This document shows positions 5,271 through 57,987 of a DNA stretch of 64,000 nt, one piece after another. The position numbers and the translations under genes are program-made. How positions within the stretch are numbered: the stretch's first letter is position 1; each line of letters opens with the position of its first letter. The stretch spans positions 682,001-746,000 of the forward strand of contig CM061252.1 of NCBI GenBank assembly GCA_022605425.2. The letters run 5' to 3'. The stretch is from Hamiltosporidium tvaerminnensis FI-OER-3-3 (Eukaryota > Fungi > Microsporidia). The notes below the pieces were generated by a model, which searched no databases, had not been told where the DNA came from, and saw nothing but the letters and a program-made list of their open reading frames with translations.

Positions 5271-5509
5271 TCCAACTATACTTGTGCATAATTGGCTTGG
5301 AGTATTCTCTGCTCTTCGTAAGAGGCACCTGAAAGGGATTCGTCCTCCATGTTGGGGTTGAGCGTAGAGCTAACAATTCACCCTGAAAAAACACCTTGTT
5401 ACGAAACCCAAAAAAGTAAACAAATCGACCAGAATAAGACATCCGGCAGTATTGCTGAGGGATTCCAAGGCGCGTGCATGGATGTAGTTCTGACGATAAA
5501 TTATACGTC
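5271..5509 (+). mobile_element. Older copy of the ~240-bp RTE-derived SINE-like element
   Basis: Colinear with the reverse complement of 57177-57416 (AATTGGCTTGGAGTATTCTCTGCT..TCGTAAGAGGC; TCCTCCATGTTGGGGTTG.GCGTAG.GCTAACAA; GTTACGAAA; CCAAGGC.CG). Degenerate TSD AAAAAATG(G)ATT at 5259-5270 and 5510-5520. Confidence 0.85.
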
Positions 5510-7704
5510 AAAAAATGATTTTATTACAATTTCTAGTATTCTTAAAGTTTTAAACCTTTACCTATGATTGAATTGAAGCTGGCTGAAAAGAAACTGCATA
5601 TCCGATCACTTCACAAATTCATAGTATATATATGGAAAACTGAACGTTTTCACAATAAAAAATAAAACAAACCACTAAGTCTGTGATTGGTCTAAAATCT
5701 ATAATTTATAAAAAAAGAGACAATTTAAATATCCAAAGTTCTATAATTGGAAAATCTATGCATCAATAATATTTTTCTATCCAGAATCAAAGGACCAAAC
5801 CTTTATTTATAGACAAAGCAACATAGCATTTTACTATTTTAGATACGTATAATTGTCTAATTCTGACTTATTCAAATGATTATTTGTTGCCCGATATCTA
5901 TAGGCGATATACTATAGTAAAATACGAGGTTTTCTAGTATTATGCTAAAAAATAAACTAATTTGCGAATGTTATAAATATGATTGGTAGTCATATTTAAT
6001 TAATTATGTTTTAAATTCGTATTTAATGTTGATATCAATTAGTATTTATTTTTGTTTTACTTTTAAGAGTCAATGTTTTCGATGATATAAGTTTAAAATA
6101 ATTTAGTATAAAAAAATAGAAATAAATTTTGAATTTAAAGTAAAAACTCTAAAATAAATGCAAAAAAAAAGTACATGATTTTTGTCATTCAAAAACCTTG
6201 AAATAAATATTTGAACAATCATAGACTTAAAAGTCATTTTGACTAATAGTATTTTAAATTATATAGAAAATCTTGTATTGAAAGAGTCTAAAACCATAAG
6301 AATAAGTAGTTAATGAATCTTATTTACTTATTCCATTTCTCTTTTATCTCGCCGTGTCAAGAATGAACAACAAAAAATTTTTTAATTGCTTCATTTAATC
6401 TTTTGTAACTCGGGTCATAGAGTATTTGTTTATAGATCCGATGTGCTTTATATCTTATCAAAATGTCAACAATGATTTTCACATCAATTTCACAAACTCA
6501 TTCCCAAACAGATAGCTTTTAATGTGGTTCTTATATCCTATACATTCGTGTAAAGAAATACTTGATTAAAATACTTGTTTTTGCAAAAATAACAACAAAT
6601 TGTAAAATATGGCGATTCTATTTCCATATTATTGTACATTTCGAAAGTATTCATTAGTACAGAAACCTATGCTATTAAAAAAAATTCCAAAATTTTTATA
6701 CTTAAAGAGATTTTGTGATATATTAGCTATACCCGCATACATTTAAGGCCTAAGCATAAAAACTTAAAAGAGTTATTTTTAATCTGATTTACGTGAAATT
6801 AAAAATATAGAAATTGACTCGAATAATTATTTGATAACTGCTTTATATTATAGGCGCGAAAAGATATATTATTTGTATTGGCATAGATAGACGTAGAATT
6901 TTAAACTTACTATTTCGTATTAATTCAATAAAAATAAATAACATACATCTAAATAATGTAGATTCTCTACAAATATTCTCTTTTAGATTTATTAGAAGTA
7001 AAATAAAGTTTTCTCGCTTATATAAAATTTAAAATGATCAGATTTTTTTAAATGAAATTCGTTAGCGAAAATTAAATTTCTTTAAATATATTATAAAGTT
7101 AAATTTTATCGTCTTGATTGAAATTAAAAATAAATTAAATTACTATCTTTAGTATTACTTACAATAATTTCGGTTTGTATTTTTATAAATCAAAAATATC
7201 CGCCTTTAAAGAATTATACGCAAAAAAAAGTTTAAAATAGATTTGCTGAAATAGCACAGACTATTATAAGCTAAAAAAATTGAAAGCAATTAAATTTAAT
7301 TACAATAATCACAATGTTCCGAATATTATCAATTCAATAATATAGTCTAGTTTATCTAGGCTTGATACATGTTGATAAACTAGGTTGAATCTATCACCGG
7401 AAATTAAATATTGGATTTAAACTGTGATCTAAAATAAAAAAGAGTCTTAGAAACATACTAGCTTTAAAATATAACTAAAAATTGTTTCTACCGCCATATA
7501 TCTTAGTTGAGATGAAAGCAAAAAAGCAACCTACATTTGTGATATAAATATTTTATATTATCATAAACCAAAATATTTATCTATTTCAATGATATTATAA
7601 CAGAAAAATTGTAAAGCTTGAAAAGAACGAAAGGAACTAAAATTTATTTAAGTATAATTTGTTTGAATGATTTCAAAACTTTAATTTTATATATGAACTA
7701 AAAT

Positions 7705-17199: not shown

Positions 17200-18426
17200 T
17201 ATGCAGAAATCGATCTGAAGATTTTTAAAGTGAATGTAGAAGAGCCCGACCAACAACCTATAAAATATTTGATCTAAAAATGAGGCCGGGTAAGCGCTAT
17301 GAACACAATATCTCAACAAATCATCTTCTGTAGACTACAAGAAAGTATATGACAGCATTGATCGACAATTTTAATACAGAAAACTCAGCAATTTTAAACA
17401 TCTTATAAATAATATTACTTTAATTAAGATGACAATATTGCGAACAAAAGAAAGGTATTGTTAACAAGTGATATATCCTGTGATTTTATAATTAATTCTG
17501 GACTGATACGGCTTGATACTTTATCTTGCGTACTGTTACATCTAACACTAGAAGGAATAATCCGTAAGTTTTCAAAGAACATTGGTGGTGCAATATAATA
17601 AAATCACACAAAATATAGTATATGCAGAGGATCCGGTAATTTGGGAAGAAAACAAGAAGATATGAAATCGAATTTACTAATATTAGCAGCGGAATTAGAA
17701 AAATCTGGCCGAAAAATATGAAACCAAAACATATACTTTGGTGATTTCCTCTGTGCCAAATACATGTGTAACTCTTTAAAAATTAATTTTTGTACATTTG
17801 AAAGTGTATCGAGCTTCAAATATCTTGGGATCTCTTCTGAACGAAGATAATAAAAATGCTTTTATGATTAAAAAAAGAATAAATTCAGGTAACGAAACCA
17901 TACTTTGCTCTGAGGCGCTTACCGAAGGCAAATCCTTAAAATCGAAATAGGGAAAGGCAAATACATAGGACTATTATTAGAGCTATTGTACTGAACGCTC
18001 CGAAACACTGATTATGACAAAAAGAGACCAAGTCTTGTTAGACATATGAGAAGGAATGATATTTAGAAGAAAATATGGCCTAATATTTGAAAATAACAAT
18101 TGAAAATTAGAAAAAATCTAGAAATCCACGGGCTTTATGATGAAATGATTTGGGTCATCATTATGAAACATCGAAGACCTAGATGGCTAGAAACTAGAAG
18201 GAATGTCGATGTAAAGAGCTGTTGGTAAAATCCTTAAATCTGCACCTGAATGTAAGAGATGATTAGGGAGACAATGAAAAAGATGCCAATGGGATTGAAA
18301 ACGATCCAAGGAAACCCAATATATTGCAATGAAAAAACTCGATGCACAATAGAGAAAAATGGAGGAGAATCGTTAAGGAGGCCCGAGCTCTCCAAGAGCT
18401 GTAGCGCCGGGGATTTAGTTAGTTAT
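17200..18426 (+). mobile_element. 5'-truncated decayed RTE-clade non-LTR retrotransposon
   Basis: RT traces VDYKKVYDSIDR (~17329-17365), LSCVL..L.LE (~17520-17552) and FKYLG (~17815-17830). C-terminal WRRIVKEARALQEL* is followed by GCGCC and a (TTAG)n tail, typical of RTE 3' ends. Confidence 0.8.
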
Positions 18427-18599: not shown

Positions 18600-19177
18600 A
18601 AGTAGGAATCACTTCCCAAGATTCACTTCAAATAGTTGAGACTGAAAAACTTAGGAAGTATGACCTGCTAGCCAATGAGTTGGGTCTTATTTATAGGTGT
18701 AGTGTTGAGATAATCCCTTATGTGATGACCTGGGACGGTATTGTGACAAAATACCATAAATCTCATCTTAAAAGACTAGAAATACCTATGAATGTAGAGG
18801 CATACATTCAGGCTATAGTACTTAAGAAAACAGTCGAAACAATTTCCTTTGATCGACGAAGAGGATTTGAGTCAGGACTAAATGCCGAAGAGAGCTGGGA
18901 GAGAGCGTCAATGGGTGTTATTATGAGATCAGAGATGCAGGAGGAACCAACACCCCCTTTAAAAGAAGAGAAGAGAGAGGAAGATAGTGCAAAAATTTTT
19001 AAACCGAAAAATAAAGCACCCTTTATTTCACAAGGAGAAACCACTTTAGAGGAACCGACCAATAACATAAATAAAGAGTCGGATTTGGAAGAAGAGACAA
19101 AAGTGGTTAAAGAGGTAGAAGAAAACATATAAAAATGGTAAAAATATTTTAACCCAGAATTTTATTAAATAAAGTAA
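18600..19177 (+). mobile_element. 5'-truncated R4/Dong-like REL retrotransposon copy, 13-bp TSD
   Basis: Matches the 3' part of 59750-63524 and ends AACCCAGAATTTTATTAAATAAA. TSD TCTAAAATTTATT at 18587-18599 and 19178-19190. Confidence 0.92.
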
Positions 19178-55660: not shown

Positions 55661-57176
55661 TTTAAATTATAAAAATTAACATTAGATTGTGTTTTATACA
55701 TAATGTATTAATAAAATATTTTGTAAGAGGAATCTACATTCAAATTTCTCTTTTATAATTGTCGTAATCTTTCTCGAGGCATCCAGATAAAAGGTATATT
55801 TATTAGAGACAGGTTCTATCATATAAATTAAAGGGATCGTTAACCCGTTTAACTAAAGAGTTGTCTTTTATAAAAAAAAGTTTACATTTTATTGCTTTAG
55901 TTCTTTTGTTTATTTTCTTCCACCATTAAGGTTTCAGTAAAATTTTATTTTATATTTTATAAGGGAATTTAAAAACCGATAATTATGTAGTAGAATATTA
56001 CAATAATACTTTTATTTCTGTTTGTTTATTCAATAATTTAATCCTCATTTGTAGAATATTAAACTTAGTTTATTACTGTTTCTTTATCAAATAAATTAAT
56101 CTTCATTTGTAGAATATTAAAATTAATATCAATAATAATTCATGCTGATTAAAATTGAAGAATTTATTAATTTTAAAAATAATTTTGCTTCCAATTCATA
56201 TTTCAATTGGAACATTTGTAATTTTAATAATTTATAGAAATTCTAGACATTAAGCTCATAGAAACGAACTTTTTTTACATTTCTAAGAAAAAACTCCGAA
56301 TTAATCTTAAACTTCACTATCTGAGGTATAATTTCTTAAGATTTTCAATAAAAATTTTATACTCTCACCTAATGTGTTCTTCGTATATTTTTTAGTCCTT
56401 CATTTTTGGATTATTTGCCGCTCTTAAGCAATTTCTCAAAAAAATTTTAGGATATTTTTAATGACGTATTGCCCTCCTTCTATTTTATTTACTTTCAATT
56501 TTTCAAAACTTCATCTCTGCATTTTATGTTTAACCTGTTCACTTTCCAACTATTTTTATTCAATTATGTCTTTTGTCTCAAATATATTTATTCAGATGTT
56601 GAATTTTCTTTGTCTGAAAACACTGTTCATTTAACTATATGCAGTCTTATTTATTTTATTTATTCTATAAATTCTTGGTCATTTCTACCACAAATCTTTG
56701 ATTTAATCAAGTACAAAGTTCTTTGAAGGTATTCAAGCCATATTTGTTATATGCAATTAGTATTAAGAATATAAATAAATTGCACGGAAGAACGGCAAAA
56801 AAACATCATTTGTATCATAAAATGTTTTATGCAACTGTAAATTCTTAGAAAAGAAATCAGAACAAATTAATTTAATTTTTTTTAGACAGAATATTTAGAA
56901 AAATGAAAACAAATGTATTTATTCGTTTCTCCTTATATATTCATACAATCTAGAAAGGATTTTTACAATTTTTATTGCTAATATTTTTTTGAACCAATAA
57001 AATTTTTTTAATTGTTTTATTTTCACTTCTACTCACTATTATTGGTTGCATAAGATTTATGAACAAATAGAAAGAGACATATCTTACTTGGAGCACTCTT
57101 ATTAGTGACTTAGATTCTTTTAAACAATTAAACATTTCGAGGTGAGTTGTCGTAGTCGTCTGAACATTGCTGAATT

Positions 57177-57416
57177 TTCATTCATTCATCCTTGGCACTT
57201 CAGCTCTGTGCGAGCCTTGGCCTCCCTTAGTAGTATCGCCCACCGGTCTTTTTCCAGTGGGTTTGTTCACTTATAGGATTTCGTAACGAGGTAGTTTTAA
57301 AGGGTGGGTTGTTAGCCCTACGCCCAACCCCAACATGGAGGATCAGTCCTGTTTAGTCGCCTCTTACGACAAGCAGAGAATACTCCAAGCCAATTCTGCT
57401 CCCGGCATAGTGGGGA
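57177..57416 (-). mobile_element. 240-bp RTE-derived SINE-like retroposon, 11-bp TSD
   Basis: Perfect TSD ATTGCTGAATT at 57166-57176 and 57417-57427. (GAAT)n tail. 3' end GGAGGCCAAGGCTCGCACAGAGCTG.AGTGCC resembles the RTE end at 18377-18407. Second copy at 5271-5509. Confidence 0.92.
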
Positions 57417-57538
57417 ATTGCTGAATTATATAAATGATAAATATAAATTTTCATAATCTTTAATATAAATTAGTTATAAAAATCTGAATATAAAAATATT
57501 TCCATTATTATTTTAACTAAAACTATTTTTAGGATTAA

Positions 57539-57987
57539 GATAACATGGGACGGTATTGTGACAAAATACCATAAGACTTATCTTAAAAGATTACAAATAC
57601 CCATAAATGTAGAGGCATACATTCAGTCCATAGTACTTAAGAAAACAGTCGAAATGATTTCCTTCGATCGACGAAGAGGAATTGAGTCAGGACCAAGTGC
57701 CGAAGAGAGTTGGGAGAGAGCGTCATTAAGTGTTATTATAGGAGCTGAGATGCATAAACAGCCAACACCCCCCTTAAAAGAAGTGAAGAACGAGGAAGAT
57801 AGTGTTAAACAAGTAAATACAAAAAATATTTTACCCCTTATTTTAGATGACGTTACTAGATTAGAGGAACCGACGATAGACATTAATGATAAGTCGGATT
57901 TAGAAAAAGAGAATAAAGTGGTTAAAGTGATGGAAGAAATTAGTTAAACGAGAGAAAATTTGTAAACCCAGAATTTTATTAAATAAA
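57539..57987 (+). mobile_element. 5'-truncated R4-like copy (second subfamily), 14-bp TSD
   Basis: ORF 57558-57947 is homologous to the element C-terminus. TSD ATTTTTAGGATTAA at 57525-57538 and 57988-58001. Confidence 0.92.

What the first reader, a model, noticed from the sequence alone, without database searches (positions are those of the whole stretch)
57166..57427. A ~240-bp non-tRNA SINE-like family with a structured head and an RTE 3' end
Seen: two dispersed copies of almost the same length (240 bp at 57177-57416, 239 bp at 5271-5509). One has a perfect 11-bp TSD and a (GAAT)n tail; the other has a degenerate TSD. The 3' ~70 nt resembles the end of the decayed RTE at 18360-18426 (EAKARTEL vs EARALQEL plus G(C/T)GCC). 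No tRNA A/B boxes are visible. Known: RTE LINEs mobilise short partners that share their ends. Inference: this is a discrete non-autonomous family that retroposed as a unit, not random truncation. I know of no such SINE description in microsporidia, but could not search.
Basis: partly seen in the sequence, partly recalled or inferred. Interest (0 to 1): 0.8.

Follow-up and report, generated by a model that had tools for sequence, protein, structure and literature searches.

The report
Mini-RTE retroposon with twister-like head
The 240-bp repeat is a real, abundant retroposon made of the first ~168 and last ~80 bases of a 3.1-kb RTE LINE. It is an ordinary kind of parasite-of-a-parasite element, but its head carries a conserved, unclassified RNA fold that resembles a twister ribozyme.

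Summary
Window 57177-57416 (minus strand) is a 240-bp element with a perfect 11-bp target-site duplication and a (TGAA)n tail. Window 5271-5509 is an old copy, about 75% like the consensus.

The genome matches Hamiltosporidium tvaerminnensis in size and contig number. It holds at least 130-400 copies. Of 42 copies read, 38 are full length, and at least 28 have 10-17-bp duplications.

This is not a pol III SINE. It is an internal-deletion derivative of a 3.1-kb RTE LINE ("RTE-B"). SINE positions 1-168 form the LINE's 5' end. Positions 160-240 form its 3' end, including the last 17 codons and the stop. The two parts join in a CTGGAAA microhomology.

RTE-A copies carry sub-threshold twister-P1 hits at their 5' ends. 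RTE-B and the SINE carry an unclassified head in that place. The head's core has twister-like nested helices. A 19-24-nt core recurs exactly in the 5' leader of two other, differently built LINEs, in a tandem array and in one more contig from unrelated sources. No Rfam family matches it.

Its function is untested. The cut predicted by analogy lies 35 nt inside the element. Earlier scan notes on other pieces of this genome had raised the twister and shared-head leads.

The parts
57177..57416 (-). Full-length copy of the 240-bp mini-RTE (SINE-like element). It is 95% like the family consensus.
57166..57176 (.). Target-site duplication ATTGCTGAATT. This copy follows the element's 3' tail.
57417..57427 (.). 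Target-site duplication ATTGCTGAATT. This copy precedes the element's 5' end.
57249..57416 (-). Element positions 1-168, equal to the 5' untranslated leader of the 3.1-kb RTE-B LINE.
   Evidence: nhmmer places SINE model positions 3-168 at L087 4014-4178, E 8e-33. Alignment A4.
57177..57258 (-). Element positions 159-240, equal to the 3' end of RTE-B. It holds the last ~17 codons (DRWAVLLREAKART.L), the stop inside GCTGTAG, a short stem-loop and the (TGAA)n tail.
57336..57387 (-). Twister-like core of the head (positions 30-81). Order of parts: P1, UAU, P2, GC-UU, P4 hairpin GUC-GUAAGAGGC-GAC, UAAA, P2', L1', P1'. This particular copy has two substitutions in P2'.
57203..57215 (-). 3' stem-loop GCUC-GCACA-GRGC just before the stop and tail. 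A hairpin sits at the same place in RTE-A (AGCUCU/AGAGCU) and RTE-B (CCC/GGG) with different sequence.
57177..57190 (-). (TGAA)n / (GAAT)n tail.
5271..5509 (+). Old copy of the same family, about 75% like the consensus. It shares the diagnostic bases of the older subfamily. No clear target-site duplication.
17600..18426 (+). 3' part of a decayed RTE-A LINE with a (TAGT)n tail. It is a cousin of the partner family, not the partner.

Best explanation
The element is a non-autonomous internal-deletion derivative of a ~3.1-kb RTE-type LINE, called RTE-B here. It keeps the LINE's 5' leader (about 168 nt) and its last ~80 nt. Those last bases hold the final 17 codons, the stop, a small stem-loop and the (GAAT)n tail. 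The two parts join inside an 8-9-nt microhomology (CTGGAAA).

Its RNA was copied into new sites by the RTE-B endonuclease and reverse transcriptase through target-primed reverse transcription. That process gave 10-17-bp target-site duplications, occasional 5' truncation and a uniform 5' end identical to the LINE's own.

Shown: the family, its ends, the duplications, the shared termini and the junction.

Inferred: mobilisation in trans, recognition of the 3' stem-loop and tail by the RT, and the role of the 5' leader. The family looks extinct or nearly so. Copies lie 5-12% from the consensus, and I found no open RTE reading frame longer than 173 aa.
For: Family, ends and duplications.

Tail shared with RTE-B:
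- L005 841-917 matches SINE positions 160-236, E 1.5e-12.
- The match is about 80% identical and keeps the reading frame and stop: D(Q/R)WA..LLR(K/E)AK...GL*.

RTE-B behaves as a LINE. It has about 24 copies with a common 3' end and variable 5' truncation.

Full-length RTE-B in sister Hamiltosporidium assemblies (L087, L088, L089):
- These copies are 96% identical to L005.
- SINE positions 3-168 sit at L087 4014-4178, and positions 160-236 at 7027-7102.
- The element is flanked by TACCT(AA/TT)AGGTTC.

In the window's own genome, the head 25-mer lies 3104 and 3105 nt upstream of two independent RTE-B 3' ends, on the same strand.

The older SINE subfamily shares diagnostic bases with the LINE tail: ACTGAGG and GCCGAGG.

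A piece of L087 hits RVT_1. The nearest outside relatives are insect proteins named endonuclease-reverse transcriptase.
Against: - The full-length evidence is therefore coordinates plus sequence from sister assemblies.
- The one full-length RTE-B lineage I read is decayed. Pfam found no endonuclease domain in its pieces, and I made no phylogeny, so 'RTE clade' rests on architecture.
- A 25-mer from SINE positions 131-155 was not found (up to 2 mismatches) at the two own-genome LINE 5' ends. The decay seen in L087 explains this, but the 126-168 stretch is supported by a single LINE lineage.
- I obtained no RNA evidence.
Confidence: 0.85

Rival explanations
1. The head acts as an ordinary LINE 5' leader. 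It would hold an internal promoter and perhaps a translation element that sets transcription to start at position 1. Its twister-like fold would then be structural, vestigial or a protein-binding site, not catalytic.
For: - The SINE copies and the full-length LINE start at the same base, right at the target-site duplication. No 5' ends pile up at the cut site predicted by analogy, position 36.
- No Rfam ribozyme model matches the head.
- Contig L086 has the head in tandem units, as seen for promoter monomers of some LINEs.
- The loop and strand that form the key pseudoknot in twister differ here.
Against: - A 19-24-nt core is identical in LINEs with unrelated reading-frame layouts from unrelated sources. 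That is unusual for a promoter.
- P1 and P2 keep pairing through sequence change.
- In the same genome the sister family RTE-A carries twister-P1-like hits at the same position.
Confidence: 0.45
2. The head is an active self-cleaving ribozyme related to twister. It would process co-transcripts or multimers of RTE-B and of the mini-element, as twister variants do for Perere-3 and HDV-like ribozymes do for R2, RTE and L1Tc.
For: - The parts come in the same order as in twister type P1: UAN, P2, GC, hairpin with a 9-nt loop GU.....GC, UAAA, P2' (against Table 1 of PMC8501958).
- P2 has two compensatory pairs. 91.8% of cells are paired, against 37-61% when the partner columns are slid.
- P1 is complementary with a different sequence in each of four sources. 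Minimum-energy folds recover P1-P2-P4.
- The motif sits at the 5' end of three LINE architectures.
- RTE-A copies have twister-P1-like hits 3.06-3.1 kb upstream of their 3' ends.
Against: - The cut predicted by analogy (U35/A36) lies 35 nt inside the retroposed unit.
- The loop reads GUAAGAGGC where twister has GUCCCAAGC, and there is no GAGGG strand. The T1 pseudoknot is therefore not conserved and I could not place it consistently.
- Only five sequences from about two lineages support the covariation.
- There is no Rfam hit and no experiment.
Confidence: 0.35
3. It is a classical pol III SINE whose head derives from a tRNA, 5S, 7SL or other small RNA gene and was fused to a LINE tail.
For: The element is short, has a uniform 5' end and has a LINE-derived tail.
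Against: - ARAGORN finds no tRNA in nine loci.
- Rfam at E up to 10 gives no small-RNA family.
- By my own reading of the consensus, the best candidate A and B boxes miss key consensus bases.
- The whole head is the 5' leader of the LINE itself.
Confidence: 0.04
4. The copies are random 5'-truncated LINE fragments or segmental duplications rather than a discrete mobile unit.
For: A few loci are duplicates of one another: L002/L003, L016/L023 and L019/L028.
Against: - Most copies have different flanks and their own target-site duplications.
- The internal junction is identical in all copies.
- 38 of 42 copies share the 5' end.
Confidence: 0.01

Closest known systems
NARTc / L1Tc of Trypanosoma cruzi and RIME / ingi of T. 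brucei (short non-autonomous partners made of the LINE's own 5' and 3' ends)
   Same: A short non-coding element shares both termini with its autonomous LINE and is flanked by target-site duplications. In L1Tc the retained first 77 nt are a functional RNA module, an HDV-like ribozyme (PMC3185411, abstract seen). The NARTc and RIME details are from my own knowledge.
   Different: The partner here is an RTE-type single-ORF LINE in a microsporidian. The tail is a (GAAT)n repeat, not poly(A). The 5' module is neither HDV-like nor any Rfam family.
Perere-3 (RTE clade) of Schistosoma mansoni with twister-variant ribozymes at its 5' end (PMC8501958)
   Same: An RTE-type LINE with a short tandem-repeat tail and a structured RNA at its 5' terminus. 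The core of the head has the same order of helices and loops as twister. The sister family RTE-A in this genome has twister-P1-like hits at its 5' ends.
   Different: In Perere-3 the target-site duplication abuts the cleavage site, and the flank supplies the 5' strand of P1. Here P1 is internal and 35 nt lie upstream of the would-be cut. The L4 loop and L1' strand differ from the twister consensus. The twister-P1 model does not hit the head.
SINEs that borrow an RTE 3' end, such as Bov-tA (from my own knowledge)
   Same: A short non-autonomous element that depends on an RTE-type reverse transcriptase through a shared 3' end.
   Different: Those have a pol III (tRNA-derived) head. This one has the LINE's own leader.
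Retrozymes and other tandem ribozyme-bearing non-autonomous retroelements (PMC4918200, PMC7229834; abstracts seen)
   Same: Non-coding retroelements built around a small structured, ribozyme-type RNA. The metagenome contig L086 carries the head core in five tandem ~110-nt units.
   Different: Retrozymes use hammerhead ribozymes and circular RNA intermediates. There is no evidence here for circles or for cleavage.

Membership tests
Classical pol III SINE | Head derived from a tRNA, 5S, 7SL or other small RNA, with an internal pol III promoter | tested here: not met
   ARAGORN found no tRNA in 9 loci. Rfam at E up to 10 gave no small-RNA family. The head is the LINE's own leader.
Classical pol III SINE | Short and non-coding, with a LINE-derived 3' end and target-site duplications | tested here: met
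   240 bp. The tail is about 80% identical to the RTE-B end. Duplications of 10-17 bp in at least 28 of 42 copies.
Internal-deletion non-autonomous LINE derivative (RIME / NARTc type) | Both termini are collinear with the two ends of one autonomous LINE family | tested here: met
   SINE positions 3-168 sit at the 5' end and positions 160-236 at the 3' end of the ~3.1-kb element in L087, L088 and L089. In the own genome the head lies 3104 and 3105 nt upstream of two RTE-B 3' ends.
Internal-deletion non-autonomous LINE derivative (RIME / NARTc type) | One fixed deletion junction in all copies | tested here: met
   All copies align through the junction at about positions 158-168, where CTGGAAA is present in both parental parts.
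RTE-clade LINE (the partner) | About 3.2 kb, single ORF, very short 3' UTR, short tandem-repeat tail | tested here: met
   Length about 3.1 kb. The stop lies about 25 nt before the (GAAT)n tail. The ORF pieces are collinear.
RTE-clade LINE (the partner) | N-terminal AP endonuclease plus reverse transcriptase domains | tested here: inconclusive
   RVT_1 was found on one piece, E 5e-10. No endonuclease hit in the decayed pieces. The nearest outside relatives are named endonuclease-reverse transcriptase.
RTE-clade LINE (the partner) | Phylogenetic placement of the RT within the RTE clade | not tested
   No reference RTE proteins or Repbase were on hand.
Twister ribozyme | Nested P1-P2-P4 helices with internal loops L1 and L2 | tested here: met
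   Read from five sources. Recovered by minimum-energy folds. P2 and P4 counts.
Twister ribozyme | L1 5' UAA, L2 GC ... (G/A)UAAA | tested here: met
   UAU or UAG, then GC, then UAAA(A), in all five sources. Twister parts as tabulated in PMC8501958. The third base of L1 is U or G where twister has A.
Twister ribozyme | L4 loop GUCCCAAGC and L1' GAGGG forming pseudoknot T1 | tested here: not met
   The loop is GUAAGAGGC and there is no GAGGG strand. A swapped AGG:CCU pairing is possible but sits at variable distance.
Twister ribozyme | Match to the Rfam twister models | tested here: not met
   No twister hit on the head or its relatives by cmscan at E up to 10. None of the 29 genome-wide RF03160 hits at E up to 1 lies on a SINE or RTE-B head. 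Only twister-P1 was run genome-wide.
Twister ribozyme | Self-cleavage at the U-A step of L1 | not testable with these tools
   Needs an in vitro cleavage assay. The predicted site (U35/A36) does not coincide with the element's 5' end.

The most novel reading that the evidence does not exclude
The ~50-nt core of the head would be a new relative of the twister ribozyme. It has the same helices and L1/L2 loops but a different L4 loop and pseudoknot partner. It would travel as a swappable 5' module among at least three LINE architectures: the RTE in a microsporidian, a single-ORF RT LINE flanked by (TAA)n, and a two-ORF endonuclease-RT LINE. The mini-RTE would then be the minimal unit that keeps this module plus the 3' RT-recognition end.
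Probability: 0.3. Interest if true: 0.8.

Novelty: new member of a known kind. Interest (0 to 1): 0.55.

Why it matters
About a quarter of this 21.6-Mb microsporidian genome is reported as unclassified repeats (PMC10542269). This family, its RTE-B parent and the twister-associated RTE-A account for part of that fraction and give clean consensus boundaries for annotation. I found no description of a LINE-dependent short retroposon in microsporidia in the papers I could search.

The wider point is the head. The same short RNA core sits at the 5' end of LINEs with unrelated proteins from unrelated sources. In this genome it occupies the position where the sister family has a twister-like motif. 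If it cleaves, it extends the twister family. It would also support the idea that LINEs exchange 5' processing modules. If it does not cleave, it is a conserved 5' leader element of unknown role that can be tested directly.

Tried and rejected
**Partner LINE**
- The four intact RT-bearing families in hand share neither end with the SINE. They are the L031 group, the L036 group, L032 with an (ATTTT)n tail, and the large ~1250-aa family.
- The tail variant GCCGAGG turned out to be an older SINE subfamily, not the LINE.

**Access to the genome**
After that I used coordinates only.
I recomputed the consensus from files.

**Other ribozyme folds for the head**
- HDV-like fold, tried by hand on the consensus and on L085. 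A 7-bp outer helix is possible in L085, but P3/L3 do not fit, and the conserved core would fall in a region that is unconserved in HDV-like ribozymes. Rejected.
- Hammerhead: CUGAUCC lacks the invariant G and A. Rejected.

**Covariation, expression and empty sites**
- Covariation among the 39 Hamiltosporidium copies is uninformative, because they are decaying copies.
- The whole-element fold is not unusually stable, z = -1.0.
- The one RNA run laid gave no reads on the stretch. This is no test, as that run is filed under a different species label from the runs that best hold the window (organism B against organism A).
- No orthologous empty site was seen. Contigs from three organism labels bridge the SINE's 3' (tail) junction, and one of them also bridges the 5' junction. 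The joints at 57153 to 57417 have short sides (22-27 nt) and were not interpreted.

**Searches for relatives of the head**
- The 5' leaders of four relatives of the L085 LINE (L090-L093) lack the exact core. The three scanned with Rfam (L090, L091, L093) gave no hit.
- The viral contig scan found nothing.
- P0007 and P0008 gave no useful contigs.
- A literature text search for the core sequence found only unrelated primers.

Full report
**1. The observation**

The element at 57177-57416 lies on the minus strand. Read on its own strand it starts TCCCCAC.ATGCCGGGAGCAG and ends GTGCCAAGGATGAATGAATGAA. The 11-mer ATTGCTGAATT flanks it on both sides. The second copy, at about 5271-5509 on the plus strand, is much older. 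It is 77% identical to the first over 190 bp and about 75% like the consensus, and I found no convincing duplication for it.

The window is contig 7, 682001-746000, of a 21,638,905-base assembly in 17 contigs. That matches the published near-chromosome assembly of Hamiltosporidium tvaerminnensis: 21.64 Mb, 17 contigs, 26.6% GC (PMC10542269). The window encodes eukaryotic genes such as an Hsp90 and a signal peptide peptidase. I take the organism to be that species on the size and contig match. No marker gene was compared.

**2. Size and behaviour of the family**

- The 240-mer gave 412 first-look candidates. All 40 scored hits are near full length at 86-93% identity.
- A tail 25-mer matches 130 places with up to 3 mismatches, and a head 25-mer matches 219. 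Both reversed controls gave zero.
- I aligned 42 distinct copies from the loci in hand. Of these, 38 begin within a few bases of the same 5' end.
- At least 28 of the 42 have a 10-17-bp duplication abutting both ends.
- The truncated copies starting at positions 60 and 115 have 16-bp and 15-bp duplications of their own.

This is the signature of target-primed reverse transcription by a LINE enzyme.

Copies in hand lie 5-12% from the consensus, with mean pairwise identity about 85%. A distinct older subfamily lies at 75-88%.

**3. The LINE partner**

It resembles the SINE only over about 45 nt.

*RTE-B.* A profile of the SINE's 3' half found a tail-only match in locus L005, at 841-917, E 1.5e-12. 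It sits downstream of an RTE-like reading frame.
- That match is about 80% identical to SINE positions 160-237.
- It keeps the frame, DQWATLLRKAKTPAGL* against DRWAVLLREAKARTGL*, with the stop inside GCTGTAG.
- This family, RTE-B, has about 24 copies with one common 3' end and varied 5' truncation.
- The older SINE subfamily shares the LINE's diagnostic bases ACTGAGG and GCCGAGG.

**4. Both ends are shared**

*By coordinates.* The head 25-mer lies on the same strand 3104 and 3105 nt upstream of the 3' ends of two different RTE-B copies (C8:639779-642883 and C3:1215434-1218537).

*By sequence.* A search with a 76-aa RTE-B piece returned two fragments from sister Hamiltosporidium assemblies. Their contigs (L087, L088, L089; GCA_004325065.1 and GCA_004325075.1) hold the orthologue of the L005 copy at 96% identity, with its upstream part.
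- SINE model positions 3-168 match L087 4014-4178 (E 8e-33).
- SINE model positions 160-236 match L087 7027-7102.
- The element is bounded by TACCTAAAGGTTC and TACCTTTAGGTTC.
- After the shared leader the LINE continues to an ATG. The SINE instead jumps to the LINE's last 80 nt.
- CTGGAAA is present at both break points.

So the SINE is RTE-B with about 2.85 kb deleted, and its 5' end is the LINE's own 5' end.

A piece of L087 hits RVT_1, but no endonuclease domain was detected in the decayed pieces. The nearest outside relatives of the C-terminal piece are cockroach proteins named endonuclease-reverse transcriptase, at 45-49% identity. No RTE-like frame longer than 173 aa was seen in the genome, so the system looks inactive now.

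**5. The 3' end**

A small hairpin directly precedes GTAG(C/T)GCC in all three families, with different stem sequences:
- AGCUCU/AGAGCU in RTE-A
- CCC/GGG in RTE-B
- GCUC/GRGC in the SINE

. This fits a stem-loop plus tail recognised by the reverse transcriptase, which is an inference from what is known of stringent LINE-SINE pairs.

**6. The head**

Earlier notes of this scan on other pieces of the genome claimed two things: twister ribozymes at RTE 5' ends, and a head shared between families. I tested the twister claim by coordinates.
- RF03160 (twister-P1) gives 29 sub-threshold, full-length hits. The best is 43.9 bits, E 1.7e-7, against a gathering score of 67.2.
- At least eight of these lie 2.5-3.1 kb upstream, on the same strand, of RTE-A-type 3' ends or reading frames.
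- None lies on a SINE or RTE-B head.
- No Rfam family matches the head.

So the two RTE lineages carry different 5' modules at the same position.

**7. The head core outside this genome**

The head's core, GTCGTAAGAGGCGACTRAAAGGGA, occurs exactly in two metagenome contigs. A 21-nt version occurs in two contigs of prokaryote-labelled assemblies.

| Contig | Context of the core |
|---|---|
| L085 | Near the start of a 1171-aa RT-only LINE flanked by (TAA)n, whose relatives are in beetles and other animals |
| L094 | At nt 17-37, ahead of ORF1 and an endonuclease-RT ORF2 |
| L086 | In five tandem ~110-nt units |
| L095 | In a contig filed under a clam gill symbiont |

The RTE-B piece has no detectable similarity to the L085 protein. 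The conservation is therefore at the level of the RNA module, not the element.

**8. Structure of the core**

Lined up on the core, all sources read: P1 5' strand, UA(U/G), P2 5' strand, GC + two bases, GUC-GUAAGAGGC-GAC, UAAA, P2 3' strand, variable stretch, P1 3' strand.
- P2 is UCUCU:AGGGA in three sources, CCUCCU:AGGAGG in L094 and CCUCC:GGGGG in L095.
- The tool count gives two pairs changed on both sides. 91.8% of cells are paired, against 37-61% when the partner columns are slid.
- P1 is UGGAG:CUCCA, CAGAG:CUCUG, CACCCG:UGGGUG and CCGCCG:CGGCGG in the four sources that include it.
- Minimum-energy folds recover P1-P2-P4.

This order of parts matches twister type P1 as tabulated in PMC8501958 (UAA, CUCC, GC, [P3], CCG-GUCCCAAGC-CGG, GUAAA, GGAG, GAGGG). 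That paper shows twister variants at the 5' end of the RTE-clade Perere-3.

The differences are real:
- The loop is GUAAGAGGC.
- There is no GAGGG strand.
- I could not place the T1 pseudoknot consistently.
- No Rfam model sees the motif.
- The cut predicted by analogy (U35/A36) lies 35 nt inside the unit that is actually retroposed. No 5' ends pile up there.

The evidence shows a conserved structured RNA. It does not show catalysis.

**9. What is known**

- I found no text on SINEs, RTEs or ribozymes in the microsporidian transposon survey, the genome report or the earlier survey. Other microsporidian genome papers only list SINEs as a RepeatMasker class.
- A text search for the core sequence found nothing relevant.
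- Short elements made of a LINE's two ends are a known kind (RIME/ingi and NARTc/L1Tc, from my knowledge; L1Tc's first 77 nt are an HDV-like ribozyme, PMC3185411).
- Dfam and Repbase could not be queried.

**10. Expression and polymorphism**

Twenty of the 24 listed runs, from seven studies, hold the stretch or part of it. None of those is on record as RNA.
- Contigs from three organism labels bridge the SINE's 3' (tail) junction with 0-1 differences. One of them also bridges the 5' junction.
- The single RNA run laid had no reads on the stretch, which is no test.
- No empty site was seen.

**11. Verdict**

The family is a mini-RTE, a new member of a known kind and probably the first characterised in microsporidia. 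The most interesting residue is the conserved, unclassified, twister-like head module.

Noticed in passing
G000 C10:118503-118575(-), C5:399499-399568(+), C8:609607-609679(-), C2:354105-354176(-), C11:96711-96781(-), C3:519307-519376(-), C3:454268-454337(+), C3:1089558-1089628(+): Sub-threshold but full-length twister-P1 (RF03160) hits lie about 2.5-3.1 kb upstream, on the same strand, of RTE-A-type 3' ends or reading frames. This RTE lineage therefore appears twister-capped, as Perere-3 is in Schistosoma.
   Followed up: partly
L086 1-540 (metagenome contig WSSedL1B2DRAFT_1002041): Five tandem ~110-nt units each carry the head core. About 200 nt and an (ACAA)n / (TGTA)n stretch follow. It looks like a short retroelement with a multimerised head.
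   Followed up: partly
L085 724-4386 minus strand (metagenome contig Ga0137377_10036353): A complete-looking LINE with a 1171-aa RT-only ORF lies between a long (TAA)n run and an (AAT)4 tail. It may target TAA repeats. Its relatives are in beetles, a lacewing, a mayfly, nematodes and fish.
   Followed up: partly
window 18680-19132(+) and 57540-57845(+); loci L043-L060: Fragments of a very abundant family with a ~1250-1300-aa ORF in which Pfam sees only RVT_1. Dozens of copies have open frames. The family ends in AAAATTTGTTAACCCAGAATTTTA with no obvious repeat tail. SINE copies are often nested inside it.
   Followed up: partly
loci L031, L034-L040, L042 (for example C4:7827, C9:2559, C9:6055, C13:50903, C14:50722): Two related RT-only families with 850-940-aa ORFs sit mostly within tens of kb of contig ends. 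They may be subtelomeric elements.
   Followed up: no
L032 (C1:619914-623657): An endonuclease-plus-RT LINE with an open frame of about 1195 aa and an (ATTTT)n tail. It is a separate family, unrelated to the SINE.
   Followed up: no
window 56744-57160: The stretch next to the SINE is itself a high-copy repeat in all three DNA runs laid. Several contigs join about 57153 to 57417 with 4-21 other letters between. The matching sides are only 22-27 nt, so I did not interpret this.
   Followed up: no
element positions 3-16 and 76-89 (window 57401-57414 and 57328-57341, minus strand): A direct repeat, CC.CCATG..GGG, brackets the twister-like core inside the head. It could be a remnant of a tandem unit like that in L086, or two strands of a larger fold.
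   Followed up: no
window 61443-62363(-): A 306-aa ORF with an RVT_1 hit. It is part of a further retroelement at the end of the window, which another reader noted as a REL-endonuclease element.
   Followed up: no
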